Assembly (NCBI RefSeq): GCF_009834535.1
Contig: NC_045704.1
Span: forward strand, 43,586,001 to 43,650,000
DNA length: 64,000 nucleotides
Reading direction: 5' to 3'
Source of the DNA: Camelus ferus
Taxonomy: Eukaryota
Shown here: piece by piece, positions 20,801 to 63,356 of the stretch
Position numbering within the stretch: the stretch's first letter is position 1
Layout of the letters: every line of letters starts with the position of its first letter
Translations under genes and position numbers: made by a program
Notes under the pieces: model-generated
Seen by the model: the letters and a program-made list of their open reading frames with translations, nothing else
What the model was told of the DNA's origin: nothing
Databases searched by the model: none

Positions 20801-20973
20801 CTGGGTGTGCTGGGCTTCTTCAGGTGAGACTGGGGCTGGACTGGGCAGTGTGGGCTGACAAAGCCAGGACCGTTCCATGACCGCCATCCCTGCCCCCTCG
20901 CAGCACTGGAGACATACATGCAACTGGCAACTGGGGCTACCTGGATCAAGTGGCTGCACTACACTGGGTCTAG

Positions 20974-21234
<261 letters not shown>

Positions 21235-24200: not shown

Positions 24201-24616
24201 TTCATTCCCTAAGCCCTGTTTGGCTGCCTTGCCTGGCCTCAGTCAGGATGTTCGGGTCTGGGCCTGGTAGGGCTCACAGTGACTCTCACACTGCTCCATG
24301 GGTGGGCATGTCTACAGGAACCCCAACAGCGAGGGTCTGCCCCACTGGCCCCTGTTTGACCAGGAGGAGAGCAATACCTGCAGCTGGACATGCAGCCTGT
24401 AGTGGGCCGGACCCTGAAGGCCCACAGGCTCCAGTTCTGGACAAAGACCCTACCTGAGAAGATGCAGGAGCTAATGGAGGCCAAGGAGAAGCACACAGAA
24501 CTGTAGCTTCCTGCATCAGGGGTTGGGGTGTGGGCTTGAGTGCAGGTGGGGGTCTGCCAGAGGTGCCCACACACACCCAGTGAGGAACCAGTAGTTTTTC
24601 CTTCATTTGCATAGCC

Positions 24617-27890: not shown

Positions 27891-28610
27891 AATAGTATCA
27901 ACTTCAGTTCCCTCCACCCTGCATCAGGGCTCAGACACACCTCCTGGCAGGCAGGACTAGACACCAACCCCCACCTCAGGCCTGACTGGGGTCATGGCCA
28001 CCACTTCCTCAGGTGGGTGATATGTGTATTTTGCAATGAGTGTACAAGATCTCATAGAAGTCATGGAGTCAGGAGACTGGAACTTGAACCTGGAGCTGCA
28101 GAGCCCTGGGCTGGCATGTCACCCAGGCCCCTGCAGGGCACTCTCCCTGCCCCGCCTCCCCCCTCCCCAAGTCTGGGCACTAGATGCTTGTTCTTAGGGC
28201 TGCCACCAGCCAGCTGGGGCTGGAGGCTGAGGTTTTCCTAGCAGCCCTTTAGAGACTGGTTGTGCCAAAGGGCAGGGATTTTATCTTATTCCACCTTCTG
28301 CCACTTCTGCCAGCAGCCAGTTGTGAGCGAGGAGCATGGAGGCAGCAGTAAGAACTGGGTCCAGGATCCTGGTCTGGGTGGCCTGTCTACTCCTGCCATT
28401 CTCTGCTACAGCCGCTGGTAAGACACCCCTGCAGGGCCTCCAGAGGTGGGAGCTTCTGGGTTTGTGGGAGGATTTGAGGGGAGGGGGCAAGAGTGAGGTA
28501 GGGACAGGAAAGGGTGGGCAGCCTGCCCAGGGAAGGAGCCCTCCATTCATTCGGAGGAATGCCAGGGGTTGTACGTCCTCTCTGGGCGGGGGCTCTGTCC
28601 TCACAGGCTG

Positions 28611-28634
28611 GTGTGTGTGTGTGTGTGTGTGTGT
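28611..28634. repeat. (GT)12 microsatellite
   Basis: Read directly. Confidence 0.9.
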
Positions 28635-31600
28635 GAGCTATCTGAGGTTCAGAGAGGGTGAGTGCCTTGCCCAAGGCCTGAGCCCACTCCCCATCCCCCA
28701 CCCCACAGGTCTGTGAGTTCCAGAAGAGCTTGGTTCCTTTACTCTAAGTAATAGTTTGGCCTGGAGGAGAAAGGTGGTGATGCAGGGTAGGGAGGAGGAA
28801 GTGGTGGGTAATCACAAAGACCATCTCACAGGCAGCCTGGGGAAGTTCACCTAAGGGCTCAGAACAGGGCGTGGCAGAGGTGCTCAGAGAGCAAACATTT
28901 TAGTGACTCCGTCTGCCACCCATCCTCTTGTGGAAGCTGCCACTCACCCACAGCCCCTCTGTCCTGCCCTCAGGACCAGGGATCACTCAGCCTGAAGTAG
29001 ACACCACCCTTGGCAGCATGCGGAGCTGGCAGGTGGGCGTGAAGGGCACAGACCGGCTCGTGAATGTCTTCCTGGGCATCCCGTTCGCCCAGCCACCCTT
29101 GGGGCCCAGCCAGTTCTCTGCCCCACGCCCAGCGCCGTCCTGGGAGGGTGTGCGGGATGCCAGCACGGTCCCTGCAATGTAAGGAGCCCCGGTGGAGGCG
29201 GGCAAGCTAGCAAGTAGTGGGAGTTCAGCTGCTAGGGTTTGTGGGGCTGACCTATTGGCCCTCGGGCTCCTCCCCAGCCACAGGTGCCTACAGGATATGG
29301 AGAGAATTAACAACAGCCGATTTACGCTGGACGGAAAACACCAGCTCTTTCCGATTTCGGAGGACTGCCTGATCCTCAACATCTACAGCCCAGCTGAGGC
29401 CACCTCAGGGGCTGGGAGGCTGGTGTGCAGCCCAGAGGGCCCTGTCCATCCAGCCCACTCCGCCTGGCCTGCCACCTTGCCATCCCTGCTCTGAAACCAC
29501 TCCGGGGGTCCCATGAATGACCTGCCCTGATAGGCTGGGGGGCGTCACTGACCCGTGGCCATCTCTGCAGGTCATGGCATGGATCCATGGGGGCTCTTTC
29601 GTGGTTGGCGCCGCCACTTCCCACAATGGCTCAGCCCTGGCCGCCTACGGGGATATGGTAGTGGTCACAGTCCAATACCGGCTGGGGATCCCTGGCTTCT
29701 TCAGGTGAGGTGGCAGTCCTGGCAGAGGATATTGACTGCACTGAGGAGAGGCCAGCTCGTGAGAGGAGCTGGGGATCTAGAGTGAGGGTCTGGAGCTTGA
29801 AGGAAGATCTCCTGGGCCAGCAGGATATCTGAGGCAGAGAAGGGTGCTTCCCCAGGCTCCACCCTGAGGGAGGGGCTCAACCAAAGCCAGCAGTTTTCAG
29901 TGGACTTTGTCCTTTGGGAAGAAAGTGTTGGCTTCTGGTCTGGGGCCAGCAGGGCATGGGGGTCAAGGAACAAAGAGCTTTAGCAAGCACTTAAGAGCCA
30001 GAGCTGGCAGTTGGCCTAGCCAGGCCCTCCCATTCCACGTGCTGGGTATATGAATACCAAGTGTGGTTCATAGCCAGGCCAGACTTGGGGAGCAGGAGAA
30101 AGTCTGGCATCCTAGTGGCTGGCTCAAAGCAAACCTGCAAAGGCTGAAGAAAGTTTGTCAGGGGAGCCAGCCCACCCTAACCACTGCCCCACTCTACCCC
30201 CAGCACTGGGGACAAGCACGCCCCTGGCAACTGGGGCTTCCTTGATGTAGTGGCTGCTCTGCGCTGGGTGCAGGGGAACATCACCCCCTTTGGAGGTGAC
30301 TTCAACTCTGTCACCATCTTTGGTGGATCTGCTGGTGCCTGCATCGTCTCTGCCCTGGTGAGTCACCAAAGGGGCTAGTGATGGTGTCTCCTGTGGCCCC
30401 AGACCTCCCAGATCTTCTGCCCTCTTCTGACGGCCATCTGTCCTCTACATTGCACCCAGGTCCTGTCCCCACTGGCTGCAGGGCTGTTCCACAGAGCTAT
30501 AGCACAGAGTGGAATCATCACCTTACCAGGATTTCTGAGTTCTGACCCCTGGCCCCTGGCTCAGGTCTGCATTTCTTTCACTCTCTTACCCCATTTGTAC
30601 CTGCCACATCCCACCCTGTGTTTGCCCTGGAGTCCCAGAGTGGAGGTCTTACCAGTAGAGAGCTTCTTGTTGGCAGAGAGGGACCAACTAGGATGAAGGA
30701 AGCACACAACCTGTGAGAACTCAGAGAAAACCATCAGTGCCACCAGGTATGACATGATCCAAGAAATTATCCCTTCAGCCTCGCTTCCTACTGACTCCCT
30801 GATCTGCTTCCAGCCTCAGCACTGACCCCCATTCCCTCCCTACCAGAGTAGCCCATGCTGGAATCCCTCCCCATCTAAACTATATCTCATTTCCTTATTC
30901 ACTCCACAAATCTTTACTGATCCCACTGGCTCTGAGAATAGAGTTAACTTGGTAATAACACTTTCCTCAGAAGGGTAAAGGAGACCTAAACACACATACA
31001 GATAATGACAGTATGATGTAATGGGGGACACAAAGGCTGCTTGGGGACCACCCAGGCTGGTGAGCAAGGAAGGCTTCTCTGGGTTGGTGGCAGGTGTCTG
31101 GCTAGTGTCAAGGTCCCATCTCTAACATCGTCACCCCAGCCCTCCTACGGATGCATCTCCTCTCTATGGGAGGCAGGGGGCTGGAAGGTGGGCAATGATG
31201 GATGAGAGAGAGAGGCAAGACACTCTTGTCTGTCCCCAGAGCTTTGCCAGCTCCTTGGCCTGTGGCTCTAACTCCTTGGCTGAGATGTTGCAGTGCCTTC
31301 GGCAGAAGTCAAGCAAGGAACTGATGCTTGCAGAGAAGTTGGTAAACCCACCTCTTAGGGGACAGTGGTGGGCAGTGGCACAGAAGGGGTCCTGTCCAGT
31401 TCCTGTGGGAGCAGAGAGGCAATTTGCAGTCCGGGGTGAGGCTTAAGGTAGCCACCTCTGAGAGGTAGTGGCTGAGGGCCCAACTAGGCCCGGCGCCATG
31501 AAGGCAGGGCCGCCCCAGCCTCAAGGGCAGGCCTGTCTTCTAAGGAAGAGGACTGCTCAGAAGCATCGCTTGACTGGTCTCCCGACCCTCACTGGTCCTC

Positions 31601-32570
31601 TCGCCCTAGTGACCTCATCCCCTCCCTTTCCTCAAGGTTTAGCCACTCAGACATGCAGCCAAGTGACCTTTGGGGTCCCATATTTTGAGGCTTGATCCTG
31701 ACTGGGAGGCCCTCTGACTTGCTTTCTCCTGCAAAAGGGTACAGCTTTCTATACCATTGACGGCACCTTCTTTCCCAAGAGCCCCAATGAGCTCCTGAGG
31801 GAGAGGCAGCTCCACTCTGTGCCCTTCCTCCTGGGTGTCAACGATCACAAGTTTGGCTGGCTCATCCCCAAGGTGAGTGTGCCCTTCAATGCCCTGCCCT
31901 AGACAGTGCTCTCCTGCCCCAGTACCATTCCCACAGCCTGTAAGCTGAGCACTTCTGTTTGATAGGTGAGAAAGCTGAGGTTGAGAGGTTTAAGGGACTT
32001 GCTCAAGGTTACCCAGCTTAATTTTCTGAAAGCAAATGTTTCCTTCCTGAGAACCAAATCTTTGCACTTTCTAGGCAGTGTCGATCCACAGCATACTCCT
32101 GCTTTGGTTCCTAGTTGATACATCAGGCTCTATGAGACTGGTTAGCATGACTCTGCCTGAGAGACTAACCATCAAAGACTCTCAGGTTTCAGACAGCAAG
32201 TCACAGCCCAAGTGCCTTCCAGCGCACTGAACTCCCCACACAGAGCATCAGCATTGCACTTTCCTTCTGAGCATCCTGTCCTATCATTCTCACTCTGCCC
32301 AGCTTCACAGTAACTGATTTAATGACTGCAAAACTGTCCACAAAAAAAAGGGTCTCATCATAATGTTCCTTCATTTCAGCACTTGGGCAGCTTCTTGTTT
32401 TTACCACTGAAGCTACTAGTGCAGTGAACCCCTTCATGTCCACAGCTTTTGTCCTCTGACTTAGTCCTTTGGATTTCATCCCCAGGAGGGGCATCTGAGT
32501 GCTTGCTGGATGAGAGCATCAAGGAATCTTGATACTCAAAGATGAAGTTTGTAGGGGTCTCCAGGCCAGT

Positions 32571-32573
<3 letters not shown>

Positions 32574-32608
<35 letters not shown>

Positions 32609-32628
32609 TGTGTGTGTGTTTGTGTGTG
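32574..32628. repeat. Interrupted (GT)n microsatellite
   Basis: Read directly. Confidence 0.9.
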
Positions 32629-34585
32629 ATGGCAGAAGAGTGTTAAGGGGAAACACTGCCCTGGACTCTGATAGGCAGCCTCACCCTGATACTGTCAACT
32701 TGGAGTTGTGAGTGTAAAAGAGAGCCAACCTTGCTGGTACCCAAGACCTGGGCAAACCTGCCTAGTGTGGAGTGCTATGTCCAGGACTTTGTAGCCAAAG
32801 ATGCTTCTCTGGAATTGAGTGCTGCCCACCCTACAGCTGGAGCAGATGTTCCCTCCACCCGCCTTGTTCTCCAAGAACAAAACTGTAAATTGTTCAGCCA
32901 ACCAGATTTCTACTAAATATCCTTGGTGAAAGCATTAGCCCTGGAAAGTAATTCATACCGCTCGTGGAGACCTCTCCACTTCTTACGTATTGCCTTTGGC
33001 ATAACACTTTCTGAAATTGCTCTGCCAATTTAAACTGCTGCCAGCAACTTGATTCTATAGGTTTGATTGCAACTATACCAGCATTTGCAGACCATAATTT
33101 TAGAAATATCAACTTTATTGAGATATAATTTGCATACCATAAAATTTACCCTTTTAAGAGTACAATTCAGTGGTTTTGAGTATACTCACAAAGTTGCACA
33201 ATTATCCCACTATCTTCTTCCAGGACATTTGCATTACCCTAAAAAGAAGTCTGTACCCATTAGCTGTCACTTCTCATTCCCCCTCCCCCCCAGCCCCTGG
33301 CAATCAGGAATCTACTTTCTGTCTCTGATCTACTTTCTGTGAAATCTATGGATTTGCCTATTCTGGACATTTCATATAAATAGAATCATACAATATATGG
33401 TTTTTGGTGTCTGACTTCTTTTACCTAGCATAATGTTTTCAAGGTTCATCCATGGTGTAGCATGTATCACTACTTCATTCTTTTTTATGGCTGGATAGTC
33501 CACTGTATGGATACACCACATTCTGTTTATCCAACCATCCATTGCTAGACAGTTGGGTTGTTTCTACCTTCTTGGCCATTATGGATTATCCTACTATAAA
33601 CACTCATGTACCAGTTTTTGTGCAAATATATGACAATTTCTCTTGGTTATATACTTAGGAATGGAATTACTGGGTCATATAGTAACTCTATGTTTTTAAT
33701 CATTTTAGGAACTGCCAAACTATTTTCCAAAGTAACTGCACCATTTTCCATTCCCCCCAGCAGTGTATGAGGATTTCAGTTACTCTGCATCCTTGCCAAC
33801 GCTTGTTATTATCTCTCGTTTTGGGTATAGTCATCCCAGGGGGTGTGCAGTGGTATCTCATTGTGGTTTTGAGTTGCACTTCCCTAATGACTAAAACGTT
33901 GAGCATCTTTTCATGTGCTTATTGGCTATTTTTATAATATTCTTTGGAGAAATGTCTTCTGAAATCCTTTGCCCATTTTCAAATTGGATTGTTTGTCTTT
34001 TTATTGTTGAGTTATAAATTTTTCATGTGTTCTAGATACAAGTCCCTTATAAGATACATGATTTTTGAATGTTTTTCCCATTCTCTGAGCTTTTTCACTT
34101 TGTTGTCAGTATTCTTCACAACACAAAAACTATTTTGTGAAGTTCAATTCATTTTTTCTTTGGTTGCTTGGCCTTTTAGTGTCATATCTAAGAAATGATT
34201 GCCTAATCCAAAGTCATAAATCTGTATGTCTTCTTCTAAGAATTTTATAGTTCTAGCCAATACATTTAGGTCTAGATTCATTTGAAGTTAATTTTTGTAT
34301 ATAGTATGAGTTAAGGATTCTTTTGCATGTGGTTATTCAGTTGTCCCTGCATCATTTGTTGAACAAATTATTCTTTCCTTATTTGAACTGTCTTGGTACC
34401 CTTATTGAAAATCAGTTGACCATGAATGAAGGAATTATTTCTGGACTTCGCACTCTACTTCATTAATTTCTATGTCTATCCTTATGCCACTGCCGCACTG
34501 TCTTGATTACTGCAGTTTTGTAGGAAGTTTTGAAATAGGAAAGTGTGACTCCTCCAACTTTGTTTGTTTGTTTGTTTGTTTGTAT

Positions 34586-34659
34586 TTTGGGGGAGTGGTA
34601 ATTAGGTATTTATTTATTTGCCACCACGCACTCTACCACTGGGCTATACCCACCCCTCC
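34586..34659 (-). mobile_element. Internally deleted tRNA-derived SINE
   Basis: Has the tail (gtggtaattaggtatttattt) and head (ctctaccactgggctataccc) but lacks the central B-box segment. Flanked by actttgtt-like duplicates. Confidence 0.6.
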
Positions 34660-34685
34660 ACTTTGTTCTTCTTTTTCAAGATTAC

Positions 34686-35128
34686 TGTAGTACTTTGCTA
34701 GGGTTGCCATAACAAAGGACAGCAATCTGGGTGGCTCAAACAACAGAAGGTATTGTCTCAGTTCTAGAGGTGAGAAGTCTGAAATCAAGGTGCTAGCAGG
34801 GTTGGTTCCTTCTGAGGGCCGCGAGAGAGAATCCGTGCCTCTTTCCTAATTTCTGGTAGCCTCAGCCATTCCTTGGCTTATAGATGGCGTTCTCCCTCTG
34901 ACTTCACATTGTCTTCCCTCTGTACCGTCTGTCTCTGTGTCCTAATATTCCCTTTTCCCAAGGACATTAGACATATTGGTCTGAGGCCCACCCTAATGAT
35001 TACTTCTGTAATCATCTTAATTTGCCAACTCTGTAAAGGCCTGACCTTTAAATAAGGTCACAGTCTGAGGTACTTGGAGTTATGACTCCACGTACCTTTT
35101 TTGTGGAACCACAATTCAATCCATAACA
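34686..35128 (+). mobile_element. MaLR (MLT1-type) solo LTR
   Basis: TG...CA ends; ctagggttgccataacaaa, gaagtctgaaatcaaggtg, aataaggtcaca...tgaggtact, cacaattcaatccataaca. Confidence 0.8.
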
Positions 35129-38100
35129 ATTGTTTTGGCTATTCTGGGCCTCCTGCATTTCCATGTGAATTATGATCAGCTTGCCCATTTCTGCCAAAAG
35201 AAAAAAAAAAAACCACCAAAAAACAAAAAAACCCAAAAACAAACAGCTGAGATTCTGATAAGGATCCTGCTGAATCTGTAGATCAGTTTGGGAAGTATTG
35301 CCACCTTAACAGTATTAAGCCTTCTGACCCGTGAACACAGACTACCTCCACTTAGGTCTTCTTTAATTTTCTCTCAATTATGTTTTCTGGTTTTTAATGT
35401 ACAGTTTTGTACTTCATTCATTAAATTTATTTCTAAGTATTTTATTCTTTTGATGCTATTGTAAATTGAATTGTTTTCTTAATATCATCTTTAGATTGTC
35501 CATTACTAGTGTACAGAAACACAATTGATTTTTGTATACTAATCTTGTAGACCATCTTTTTTTAAAAGTTTTGCTACTTTAACTTCTGTGGCCTTTAATT
35601 TAGTCCTTTTATTCCCAGTGAAGATTAATAGCTCCCTTTGGGTATAAACTCTTTGTGTTTATTCATTTGTGGATTTTCTGTACCTGTTCTTACAAAGATT
35701 AACAGAGCCTAGGAGCCATGAAATTAACTTTAATAACTAACATCTCCATCATGCTTACTCTGTATCAGGGTCTTTATATGTATTAATTCCATCCTCACTA
35801 CAATCCTACAAGGCAGGGTATTGTCACTCCTTTCACAGATTAAGAAACTGAGACACAGAGAGTTTAAGAAACTGGCCCATGTTGTGTGCCTAGTAAGTGG
35901 CAGAGCTGGGATTTGAACCCAGAGACTGTGCCCTTAAAACTGTAACATATAAAGCCAACATTTCACTTTAAAGACAACATTTGAACTTTCCCTGTAGCAG
36001 GGGCTACAGCATCTGGGGGTCTTGATGCTATTCTACAAAAATGTTGAACACATTCCCAAATTGCTGTTACCCACTTGCCTGTCGCTTTTTCCTCCCTCCC
36101 CAGTTGATCTCTTCGGGTCTGTGGACTGGTGGGTTTGGCTACCCTTGGCTCTGTAATGAATTCATGGGCACAGGGCTGTGAACACCTGCCTGCTCATTGC
36201 TGGGAGTTGGGCTGGGGGTGGGGTGGAGGTGATCAGGCTGCACTGAGAGGGCCTTGGTGTCCCTGCAGGGCTGGGGGATCCTGGATAAGATGAATCAGAT
36301 GAACCCGGAGGACTTGCTGGCCATCTTGAGGCCCTTCTTGACCAGTATGGTGAGACAAAAAGCAGGAAGGAGTAGTCCAGCGGGGGTTCTACCCAGCATA
36401 GTCTCTGCTTCTACCCTCCAACACCCATAGCTACCTCCCTACCGCCAAGCCCCATGGTCTAACTACTGACTTTTAGTTCCACCCACTAATCCCCTTGGAC
36501 AGGAATCAATGTGGTTCTCAAAGGAAGATTATCATCACCATCACCATCATCATCACCATCATTTTCATCACCAATAAGTGCATACCATGTGCCAGAGACT
36601 GTGCTGTGCTGAGCACAGGCATTCCTCTCCTTCAGTCTCATTACAACCCTGTGAAGTAGGGACTTCCATTAGACTCATTCTACAGATGAGGAAACTCAGG
36701 CTTATGGTGGATAAGGAGCAGAGGCAGAGCTCGAGCCAGCTGTCTGATCCCAGAGCTTCAGCTATTAAGAGCACACTGTCGTATGTGAAACCAGGTGGAC
36801 CTAGGGTCAAATTCCAACCTTGGCTACTTGTCCACAGTTATCCTAACTCCTCTGAGTCCATTTCTTCACCTGTAAATGAGGATGATACTTCTCGTCCACA
36901 TGAGCTGCTGTAAGAAGGATACTGGATGCTGCATTTGAAGAGTCTACCAGTGAGCTCTGGTACCCAGGAGGTGCTCAGTCTATGTGCATTTCCCTTCTTT
37001 GAGACCCCCCGGAGCCCTCCTCATTCACACAGCCTCATTACTGTTCTCTGGAGCTATGGGGAGTTCTCATGATTTGTTTTCCCACTAACATCCTGGTTAA
37101 CTTCAACTGAGCACTTGCTCCAGGCCAGAACCCTTTTACATAGGCTGCCAAACAAACTTCCAGGGAGGAACTGACTTTCAGAGAGGCTCAGCAACCTGTC
37201 TGAGGTCACAGAGCCAAGCAGTGATTGCAGAGCTAGCATATGACTCCAGATCTGACCTTATCCTGCCCAGACACCATCGAGAACTCCCCAAGGGGGCAAG
37301 TGGCCGGCCCCTGGCACATGAGCTCTGGGACATGAAAGAGGCCAGGCAGGAGGGTGTGGGGCCTCTTGGGAGTGTCTACTGTGCCTGTGGGACCTGAGCA
37401 GGCCTCTTGCTCCAGAATGTGCCTGCTGAGGTGATACCTACCATCATAGACGAATACCTAGGCAGCAGCTCAGATGGACAAGACAAATGAGAAGCCTTCC
37501 AGGAATTGATGAGTGACATTGTCATAAACTTTCCCATGCTGAATTTTTCAAGAAACCTCAGAGGTAAGCCCATCCTTGTCTGCCCGCCCCACCCTTCTCA
37601 CTTGGGCCCAGGGTTATCACAGGTGACATGGCCCCACATCCCATATCCCACTTCCTCTCTGGGATGCAGTGTCACAGCAGTGAGAAGTGACTCTGGTGGG
37701 GCACTCTGCAGAAGAGAAAACCAAGGCTCAGAGAGGTACAGTGACTTGTCAAAGGTCACCCAGGGCCTTTCATCAATTCTCAGGGATTCATTTGACTTAT
37801 GAGTGATTTCCTAAGCTTTCAGCCCTTCTCCTGGGAGGAAAGTCTTGCTTCCTCCAAGCCTCATGGTTAATCCCTAACACAGTCCTGAAACAGCTCCAGG
37901 TTCCTGTCTTTGTGACCTCAGGCAAGAAACCTAACCATTCTGTGCCTCAGTCTCCTCATTTGTAAAATGGGGATAATAATCTAATCCATAGGTTGTTATG
38001 AAGATGAAATGAACACATAAAGCACATGGAATGGTGCTCAACACCCAGCAAGTACTCAGTAAATGCTTGCTGTTCACCAGGTTGTCATCATCATTGTTAT

Positions 38101-40289
38101 TACTGATATTGGTATGATGATGAGCCTTTCCTACCAAAAATAGGACCTGACCAGGCTGTGGGTACCTAATGCTTATCCAGCCCTCTCTCCACAGATTCCA
38201 TCTTTTTCTATCTGTTCCAGCATCGACCCAGTTCTTTCGTGAAGTTCAAGCCGGCCTGGGTGCGGGCTGACCATGGGGCTGAGATGGCCTTCCTGTTCGG
38301 GGGTCCTTTCCTCACGGATGAGAGCTCCATGCTGGGTAAGGATGGACAGGCTGCCAGGCTCCGGGCGCGGCTTGCAGGAACAGAGGTCTCTGGTCAGCAC
38401 AGGGGACCCTTGGGTCTCCTCCAGGACCCATTTGACCCTGATCTAGATCTGCCCTCCCATAGCCTTTCCAGAAGCCACAGAGGAGGAGAAGCAGCTGAGC
38501 CTCACCATGATGGCCCAGTGGACCCACTTTGCCCGGACAGGGTGAGTGAGCCAGCAGGCATGCCTGGCTTTGGGCCTGGACTACTCAGAGCTGCCTCCTG
38601 GGGAGCAATACAGAGGCCTTTGTCTTCATTCATTCCTCCCACCCAGGAATCCCAATGACAGCGGGCTGCCTCTTTGGCCCTCCTTCAACCATTCAGAGCA
38701 ATATCTGGAAATCGGCCTGGTGCCACGGGTCAGCCAGAAGCTAAGGAAGGCCCGAATGCAGTTCTGGGCAGAGACACTTCCCACCAAGATCCAGCAGTGG
38801 CAGCAGAAGATGAAGGTCAGGAAGGCCCGGGAGGATCTCTAAGGCAGGGCCTGGGTCTTCTGGGCTCAGGGCCAACCCTAGGGGTGGGCAAGTCTCAGTG
38901 GGGCAGCCTCCTTCTCCCCCTGCTAAGAAACTTTAACTCAAACCAGGCTGATGAGTAGTCATGCCTCCTAAAGCTTCAGCCCCTCCATGACTGGCAATGT
39001 GCTCCTTTGAAATGTCATCTGCTCCCATAGAGGGGGGCTTTGCACAAACTTCCTCTCCCCACTTTTTTCATGGAAATTTCAGTTCATATTTCAAGCTTCC
39101 CAAAGGACCCTCCTCCTCCAGGACCTGCTTCAGGCCTGGCCCTATCTGTGTCCGTTACAGCTTGGCCCACTCTAGGCTAGCATTGTCTGTGTCTGTGTTT
39201 CTCTCCCACTCTGAGGAGTTCTCTGAGCATGGAAATCAGCCTGACCCCGTTCTGCATCTCTCATGCCAGGATTGGGCAGGACCTGGAGTCAGAGGATGTT
39301 TGGTGAATGAGTGAAAGACTGAGAAAGTATCAGAATGGTGGCTGCTGGACGTGAACCCAGGCCATTTAGGCACCAAAGCTATGCTTAATCCTGCACAGAT
39401 ATTGTCCCCCTGGCCAGAAGGGTGGATGGACTCCAGGGGCAGAAACTTGGGGTAGGGGAGTCCTGAAGCATCAGGGGATCCAGCCTAGAACAGATCTTAG
39501 CCCCCAGAAGCCTCTGATTAGAGCTGGGGGAGGTCCCTTTTTCCATGCTTGGCCCTTGCACAAGACAGAACAGAGTTCAACAGGGCCAGAACCCTGATCC
39601 TTGGACATGAGATGCAAGCTTCCCAGCCCTAGGGCCTCATCCCTTTAGGCCTGGTGGGGCTGCTTCCTCCCCACTCCAGCTATAGAAGACCAACTTCCAG
39701 GGGAGCTCAGCACAACTCTCAGAGCACCTATCAGGACACAGGAGAACAAGATAGGTGAGAGTGTCTGGACTGGTGCAACAGTCAAGTTGTCACAGAGAAA
39801 AGAAGAGATCTACCTGCTCAGGCTACAATAGGTGAAAAGCAGCCAGAGGATTTTGAGTAGGAGCACACATTTCTTCTTTTGCTGATCAATACACCATTCC
39901 CTTGTAACATCTGGACTTTAATACATAGCCCAGTGACTTCCCCCACCCCGACTACCCCATCCTACCTACTCCAATCTCACGTATACCCTTCCTCAGTCAG
40001 ACTAAATTCCTGGCTCCTAATGGTTACGTGAAAACCACTTACAGTTGGGACCAGTTCTGTTCTGGGAAGTTCGCTTGGGGCAGTAAAGAGAATCATAAAC
40101 CAGAGGGGTTCTGAGTGGTGCCACTCCCCTGCTCAAGAGCTCCCAGTGAATTCCTGTTACCCTTAGGGCAAGTCTAAGTTCTTTACGTGGCATCGAAGGG
40201 CTCCTCTTCTTATCCTCTTCTCTCCACCGAGGAAGCTTGTCCCGACAAGCTGGCAGACACCCAACAGGTAAATAGGCCACAATCACACA

Positions 40290-50088: not shown

Positions 50089-63356
<13,268 letters not shown>

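What the first reader, a model, noticed from the sequence alone, without database searches (positions are those of the whole stretch)
31738..37563. CES3 lost its catalytic glutamate and has a premature stop
Seen: exon 8 reads GVNDHKFGW, with AAG at 31849-31851 where CES2 (NNDEYG) and CES4A (NSMEFS) have the triad Glu. Exon 10 has TGA at 37488-37490 (codon 404), upstream of the catalytic His and REDL. Both fit CpG deamination (cac-GAG to AAG; CGA to TGA; inference). Exon 10 is 148 nt, so skipping does not restore the frame, and the transcript should be an NMD target.
Basis: partly seen in the sequence, partly recalled or inferred. Interest (0 to 1): 0.72.

Follow-up and report, generated by a model that had tools for sequence, protein, structure and literature searches.

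The report
Camel CES3 is a dead gene

Summary
Both observations are real. CES3 lies at 28336-38842 (+), between CES2 and CES4A. It has 13 exons, all with AG acceptors and GT donors. AAG at 31849-31851 puts Lys at codon 345, where 26 other mammalian CES3 proteins and alpaca have the catalytic Glu. TGA at 37488-37490 is codon 404, upstream of the catalytic His (codon 455) and the C-terminal REDL.

Sampled words spanning the TGA occur in DNA runs under three organism labels and in six RNA runs. One RNA contig joins exon 9 to exon 10 with the TGA, then to a cryptic acceptor 26 nt inside exon 11.

In Camelus, 21 nonsynonymous and 6 synonymous changes give dN/dS of about 1.1, against 0.25 in alpaca.

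The inactivation is already published (PMC12127551, iScience 2025: early stop in all three Old World camels, not in alpaca). New here are only the Glu-to-Lys change, the deletion, the cryptic splice and the rate estimate. Degradation of the mRNA is predicted but was not measured.

The parts
28336..38842 (+). CES3 coding region, ATG to TAA. The 13 exons are 28336-28417, 28974-29178, 29284-29422, 29571-29704, 30204-30357, 30460-30564, 31240-31341, 31738-31872, 36269-36349, 37416-37563, 38195-38335, 38463-38541, 38647-38842.
   Evidence: 1701 nt, every intron GT-AG, one internal stop. Exon lengths match alpaca, cattle and horse CES3 except exon 8 (cattle and horse 3 nt longer) and exon 11 (9 nt shorter in the window). 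Locus identity is 96.8% to the alpaca CES3 locus and 99.4% to the dromedary locus.
30328..30330 (+). Catalytic Ser codon (Ser229, GGSAGA), retained.
31849..31851 (+). AAG = Lys345 in place of the catalytic Glu. G-to-A at 31849 within an ancestral CpG (CAC-GAG).
   Evidence: Alpaca has GAG; window and dromedary have AAG.
37488..37490 (+). Premature stop TGA, codon 404, exon 10. C-to-T at 37488 within ancestral CGA.
   Evidence: Present in an RNA contig and in words held by DNA runs of three organism labels. Published for all three Old World camels.
38195..38198 (+). Site of a 9-nt in-frame deletion at the 5' end of exon 11. Alpaca has ATTTCGGGGTCTCC where the window has ATTCC; three codons are lost (DFGVS becomes DS).
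   Evidence: Shared with dromedary; absent from alpaca, cattle and horse.
38219..38221 (+). Cryptic 3' splice site (AG at 38219-38220, first exonic base 38221), 26 nt inside exon 11. Used in the one RNA contig seen; shifts the frame.
   Evidence: the loose end after 37563 reads CATCGACCCAG..., which is 38221 onward.
38272..38274 (+). Catalytic His codon (His455, ADHGAE), intact but downstream of the stop.
38828..38842 (+). C-terminal REDL and the natural TAA stop.

Best explanation
This is the single-copy orthologue of carboxylesterase 3 in an Old World camel. The window is not the CamDro3 dromedary and is probably a two-humped camel (inference). The gene has become a unitary pseudogene. After the split from llamas and alpacas, and before dromedary and this camel diverged, three lesions arose: a CpG transition that turned the catalytic Glu into Lys, a CpG transition that turned Arg404 (CGA) into TGA, and a 9-nt deletion at the start of exon 11. 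Since then the coding sequence has evolved at the neutral rate. The promoter and all canonical splice sites survive, so the gene is still transcribed and spliced. Any product would stop at residue 403 and lack the catalytic His and the REDL tail, and the mRNA meets the position rule for nonsense-mediated decay. Shown here: the lesions, their sharing between two camel species, their absence from alpaca, the neutral substitution pattern, and a spliced RNA carrying the stop. Inferred: the order of the lesions, the date, actual mRNA decay, and loss of enzyme activity.
For: Gene model with one stop at codon 404. Glu invariant in 26 other mammalian CES3 and in alpaca; Arg at 404 in other artiodactyls and horse. 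Nucleotide states in window / dromedary / alpaca are A/A/G at 31849 and T/T/C at 37488, and the 9-nt gap is shared by window and dromedary. Parsimony on window, dromedary, alpaca, cattle and horse gives 6 synonymous and 21 nonsynonymous changes in Camelus (dN/dS about 1.1) against 14 and 11 in alpaca (0.25); Fisher p = 0.02. The count fits omega = 1 (p = 0.53) and is unlikely under omega = 0.35 (p = 0.007); the 403 codons upstream of the stop give 18:5. Coding divergence between the two camels (12/1701 = 0.71%) is no lower than non-coding divergence (55/11588 = 0.47%). At 154 sites invariant in 24 non-camelid placentals the window has 9 changes, dromedary 7, alpaca 2. An RNA contig spans exon 9, exon 10 with the TGA, and exon 11. 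Words spanning the TGA are held by DNA runs of three organism labels. Independent publication: PMC12127551.
Against: No raw-read genotypes were obtained: the two DNA runs laid gave nothing because of a filter, and the Lys codon could not be searched by words. The word search on the TGA rests on two sampled words. Substitution counts are small (27 events), and the parsimony and Nei-Gojobori site counts ignore transition bias. Whether a second intact CES3 copy exists elsewhere in the genome was not examined. The paper reports a further 5-base deletion in Camelus bactrianus that this window does not have.
Confidence: 0.9

Rival explanations
1. The stop and the Lys are assembly or sequencing errors, or rare alleles segregating in one species.
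For: The two DNA runs laid (X1, X6) returned no contigs, so there is no direct DNA read-level view.
Against: Both changes and the deletion are in an independent assembly of another species (dromedary). An RNA contig from an unrelated run carries the TGA. Words spanning the TGA are held by DNA runs under three organism labels, seven samples and at least five studies. The paper finds the stop in all three Camelus species.
Confidence: 0.02
2. The gene still makes a useful non-catalytic product. This could be the 403-residue N-terminal fragment. It could also be an isoform that skips exon 10 and uses the cryptic acceptor at 38221; 148 + 26 = 174 nt is in frame and would keep His and REDL.
For: All 13 canonical splice-site pairs and the start codon are conserved. 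The gene is still transcribed. The arithmetic of the double event restores the frame (my calculation). Catalytically dead members of this fold with other roles exist (neuroligins, thyroglobulin; own knowledge).
Against: dN/dS is about 1.1 in the 403 codons upstream of the stop (18 nonsynonymous, 5 synonymous). There are extra hits at otherwise invariant residues (G45S, R74Q, P142L, V145A, D161N, V171M). The only junction seen keeps exon 10. No exon 9 to 38221 junction was observed.
Confidence: 0.05
3. The TGA is read through or recoded (selenocysteine or programmed readthrough), so a full-length protein is made.
For: None beyond the codon being TGA and the downstream frame being open to the natural stop.
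Against: The ancestral codon is Arg (CGA) in alpaca and Arg in other artiodactyls. The catalytic Glu is lost as well, and the downstream part also takes a deletion and substitutions. The observed transcript shifts frame at exon 11. CES enzymes are not selenoproteins (own knowledge).
Confidence: 0.01

Closest known systems
CES3 inactivation in Old World camels (iScience 2025, PMC12127551)
   Same: Same gene, same lineage, same kind of lesion: an early stop codon in all three Camelus species, absent from alpaca, supported there by PseudoChecker and TOGA.
   Different: The main text and figure legends do not mention the Glu-to-Lys change, the 9-nt exon 11 deletion, the CpG origin of the lesions, the cryptic acceptor or a rate estimate; its supplement is not held. 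It reports a further 5-base deletion in C. bactrianus that this window lacks.
Functional mammalian CES3 (alpaca XP_072824931.1, cattle, horse, human)
   Same: Position between CES2 and CES4A, 13-exon structure, about 79% protein identity to horse and ruminants, nucleophile Ser in GGSAG, His in ADHGAE, and an REDL or QEDL type C-terminus.
   Different: Lys replaces the triad Glu, there is a stop at codon 404, three residues are deleted, and the rate is neutral.
Other lineage-specific unitary pseudogenes of metabolic enzymes, including the CES3 losses reported as enriched in Whippomorpha
   Same: One or a few disabling point lesions, conserved splice sites, residual transcription, and dN/dS rising to 1. 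The paper notes enrichment of such losses in Whippomorpha for 6 of its 10 genes.
   Different: I did not examine any cetacean or hippo CES3. No cetacean CES3 appeared among the listed proteins, which is not a test.

Membership tests
CES3 orthologue (type-B carboxylesterase, PF00135) | Position in the CES2 - CES3 - CES4A cluster, same strand | tested here: met
   CES2 ends with HTEL at about 24492, CES3 ends with REDL at 38828, and CES4A starts at about 56418, all on +.
CES3 orthologue (type-B carboxylesterase, PF00135) | Exon structure and sequence match annotated CES3 of relatives | tested here: met
   13 exons with the same lengths as alpaca except exon 11. The locus is 96.8% identical to the alpaca CES3 locus. 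Best protein matches are named carboxylesterase 3 and carry PF00135.
Active carboxylesterase | Complete Ser-Glu-His triad | tested here: not met
   Ser229 and His455 codons are present; the acid position is Lys345.
Active carboxylesterase | Uninterrupted reading frame | tested here: not met
   TGA at codon 404, also present in RNA.
Unitary pseudogene | Disabling lesion fixed in the lineage, with an intact orthologue in the sister lineage | tested here: met
   Window and dromedary share all three lesions; alpaca has none. Words spanning the TGA occur under three organism labels. Literature agrees.
Unitary pseudogene | Relaxed constraint (dN/dS near 1) after inactivation | tested here: met
   21 nonsynonymous and 6 synonymous changes in Camelus, against 11 and 14 in alpaca.
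Unitary pseudogene | No intact second copy in the genome | not tested
   Only this 64-kb window and the single loci fetched were examined. The paper treats CES3 as a 1:1 orthologue.
NMD target | Premature stop more than 50-55 nt upstream of the last exon junction | tested here: met
   The stop lies 293 nt upstream of the exon 12-13 junction.
NMD target | Reduced steady-state mRNA that recovers when NMD is blocked | not testable with these tools
   Only assembler contigs were available. One contig of word depth 3.6 carries the stop. Depth from such contigs is not a measure of expression.

The most novel reading that the evidence does not exclude
CES3 loss may be part of a wider decay of the carboxylesterase cluster in Old World camels. 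The neighbouring CES2 in this window also has an in-frame stop, at 20971-20973 (first-stage note s1-149135). If that stop is fixed too and no intact CES2 copy exists, camels would lack both the main intestinal carboxylesterase and CES3. That would matter for lipid handling and for ester drugs and prodrugs in camel medicine. A smaller point is that the Glu-to-Lys change may have made CES3 catalytically dead before the stop arose.
Probability: 0.25. Interest if true: 0.5.

Novelty: already known. Interest (0 to 1): 0.2.

Why it matters
It independently confirms a published lineage-specific gene loss and adds detail: a second active-site lesion, a third lesion, CpG origin of both point lesions, a neutral rate, and residual aberrant splicing. 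In practice it means camel CES3 should be annotated as a pseudogene, not as a 'corrected' low-quality protein or a model that avoids exon 10 (as in KAB1273074.1). Camel ester and lipid metabolism cannot be extrapolated from cattle or alpaca CES3. It opens no new question on its own.

Tried and rejected
The call was still counted.
- In the second and last laying call (37250-37750), DNA runs X1 and X6 gave no contigs, and RNA-labelled run X15 gave only an intron piece. Only RNA run X17 was informative.
- A 61-nt word search centred on the Lys codon had fewer than two sampled words. The Lys codon therefore rests on two assemblies, not on reads.
- The single representative-library search with exon 2 found only fragments and fused models, with no full-length mammalian CES3.
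- I reached orthologues by aligning exon pieces to a caecilian esterase and searching with that alignment. The alignment itself was poor, and a second one with horse was no better. Horse CES3 alone then found the alpaca and dromedary entries.
- Holmes et al. 2010 on CES3 is not held, and the supplement of PMC12127551 is not held. I could not check that the published stop is this same codon or where the reported 5-base deletion lies.
- Selenocysteine or readthrough and a functional truncated product were considered and rated low (see rivals).
- The crude date of about 13-14 Mya for inactivation uses split times from my own memory (16.3 and 4.4 Mya) and 15 substitutions. It is an order-of-magnitude figure only.

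Full report
**1. What is in the window**

Motif scans place three carboxylesterase genes on the + strand. CES2 ends with HTEL near 24492, CES3 ends with REDL at 38828, and CES4A begins near 56418. I built a CES3 model from open stretches and splice signals. It has 13 exons and 1701 nt. Every intron is GT-AG, the frame is continuous from ATG 28336 to TAA 38840-38842, and there is exactly one internal stop. Exon lengths (82, 205, 139, 134, 154, 105, 102, 135, 81, 148, 141, 79, 196) equal those of annotated alpaca CES3 except exon 11, which is 150 nt in alpaca. They also match cattle and horse, apart from one extra codon in their exon 8.

**2. The two observations**

- AAG sits at 31849-31851 in GVNDHKFGW. 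This is codon 345.
- TGA sits at 37488-37490 in exon 10, which is 37416-37563 and 148 nt long. This is codon 404.
- The catalytic Ser (codon 229, GGSAGA) and His (codon 455, ADHGAE) codons are intact. The His and the REDL tail lie downstream of the stop.
- In solved carboxylesterase structures the Lys aligns with the Glu of GVNNDEFGW. That this Glu is the acid of the triad is established knowledge for human CES1, from my own memory.
- One small correction: exon 8 ends at 31872, not 31881.

**3. Comparison with other species**

Twenty-six mammalian CES3 proteins, from platypus to primates, all have Glu at this position. Ruminants, peccary and horse have Arg at codon 404.

Alpaca CES3 reads NDHEFGW, DKREAF and RDFGVSIFFY. 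This holds for three database entries from two annotation rounds.

A dromedary gene model (KAB1273074.1) reads NDHKFGW and DSIFFYL. It avoids exon 10 with an invented exon.

I fetched the alpaca and dromedary loci. The window is 96.8% identical to alpaca and 99.4% identical to dromedary over 13 kb. The window is therefore a Camelus that is not the CamDro3 dromedary.

Site by site:

| Position | Window | Dromedary | Alpaca |
|---|---|---|---|
| 31849 | A | A | G |
| 37488 | T | T | C |
| Start of exon 11 | 9-nt gap | 9-nt gap | no gap |

The ancestral codons are CAC-GAG and CGA. All splice sites are conserved in the three camelids.

**4. Evidence from sequencing runs**

- In the second call the two DNA runs returned nothing because of a filter.
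- RNA run X17 gave a 207-nt contig with the end of exon 9, all of exon 10 with no differences (so with the TGA), and then CATCGACCCAG....
- That last sequence begins at 38221, 26 nt inside exon 11. The transcript therefore uses a cryptic acceptor and shifts frame.
- The AG at 38219-38220 exists in all species. In Camelus the 9-nt deletion removes a G-rich segment and a GAG/CAG-to-CTG change removes purines. The 26 nt upstream of the cryptic AG become an almost unbroken pyrimidine run. That this explains its use is my inference from one contig.
- A 61-nt stretch in which every 31-letter word covers base 37489, and all but one cover the T at 37488, is held at share 1.00 by DNA runs of three organism labels (seven samples, at least five studies) and by six RNA runs. 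Only two words were sampled.
- The same test for the Lys codon failed for lack of sampled words.

**5. Selection**

I ran parsimony on the codon alignment of window, dromedary, alpaca, cattle and horse:

| Branch | Synonymous | Nonsynonymous | dN/dS |
|---|---|---|---|
| Camelus stem | 4 | 11 | 0.86 |
| Window | 2 | 7 | 1.09 |
| Dromedary | 0 | 3 | - |
| Alpaca | 14 | 11 | 0.25 |
| Camelid stem | 39 | 55 | 0.44 |
| Cattle | 50.5 | 73.5 | 0.45 |

- Camelus in total has 21 nonsynonymous and 6 synonymous changes. This fits omega = 1 (p = 0.53) and is unlikely at omega = 0.35 (p = 0.007). It differs from alpaca with Fisher p = 0.02.
- The 403 codons upstream of the stop show the same pattern (18:5). 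This argues against a conserved truncated product.
- Coding divergence between the two camels (0.71%) is not below non-coding divergence (0.47%).
- At 154 residues invariant in 24 non-camelid placentals, the window has 9 changes, dromedary 7 and alpaca 2.
- A crude partition of the stem rate puts inactivation early on the Camelus stem, around 13-14 Mya. It assumes split dates I took from memory, and it rests on 15 substitutions.

**6. Mechanism**

The stop lies 293 nt upstream of the last exon junction, so the mRNA meets the position rule for nonsense-mediated decay. RNA carrying the stop is detectable in several runs, and no level could be measured. Any translated product would end at residue 403 and lack His455 and REDL, with Lys at the acid position.

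The order of the three lesions cannot be resolved. All three map to the same branch.

**7. What is known**

[quoted passage not shown] It reports an early stop codon in all three species, not in alpaca, and a further 5-base deletion in C. bactrianus. This window has no such deletion in the coding exons.

The paper's main text does not mention the Glu-to-Lys change, the 9-nt deletion or the splicing. Its supplement is not held.

The central claim is therefore already known, and the additions here are incremental.

**8. Rivals**

- Assembly error or polymorphism is excluded by sharing across two assemblies, RNA and many runs.
- Recoding of TGA has no support.
- A functional truncated or exon-skipped product is not excluded outright. 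Skipping exon 10 together with the cryptic acceptor would remove 174 nt in frame. The neutral rate and the single observed junction argue against it.

**9. In passing**

CES2 in the same window has an in-frame stop at 20971-20973. This agrees in part with first-stage note s1-149135. I found no paper on CES2 loss in camels and did not follow this up.

Noticed in passing
window 20971-20973 (CES2 exon with the nucleophile elbow, 20902-21186): CES2 has an in-frame stop ([14 protein letters not shown]), and its nucleophile elbow reads GQSAGG instead of GESAGG. Another first-stage note says CES2 carries two disabling mutations. I did not check this in dromedary or alpaca, or whether an intact CES2 copy exists. 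No paper on it was found.
   Followed up: partly
window 28366-29625 (CES3 exons 1-4 and introns): Ten of the 37 window-specific substitutions across the 13-kb locus fall in one 1-kb bin (27836+1000 to +2000 region, i.e. about 28.8-29.8 kb), and nearly all are C-to-T or G-to-A. Seven of them change amino acids, including P142L and D161N at otherwise invariant sites. This could be a decaying CpG-rich 5' region or chance.
   Followed up: partly
window 33104-33196: An L1 3'-end-like repeat in CES3 intron 8 blocks read laying on this stretch. Intron 8 is 4.4 kb and largely repeat-derived.
   Followed up: no
L002 (dromedary CM016635.2) and protein KAB1273074.1: The deposited dromedary 'Carboxylesterase 3' model (587 aa) avoids the stop-bearing exon 10 by using invented exons (extra segments after exons 1 and 6, and VVIIIVITDI in place of exon 10). 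It is an annotation artefact on a pseudogene.
   Followed up: partly
L001 (alpaca), codon 88: Alpaca CES3 has Trp where 24 other placentals and Camelus have Arg (GVRDAS to GVWDAS), also a CpG transition. It is the only alpaca-specific change at an invariant site.
   Followed up: no
runs X15, X16: Two small runs labelled RNA (about 650-740 million letters) hold 67-78% of the words of a stretch that is 94% intron. They contain either abundant unspliced CES3 RNA or genomic DNA.
   Followed up: no
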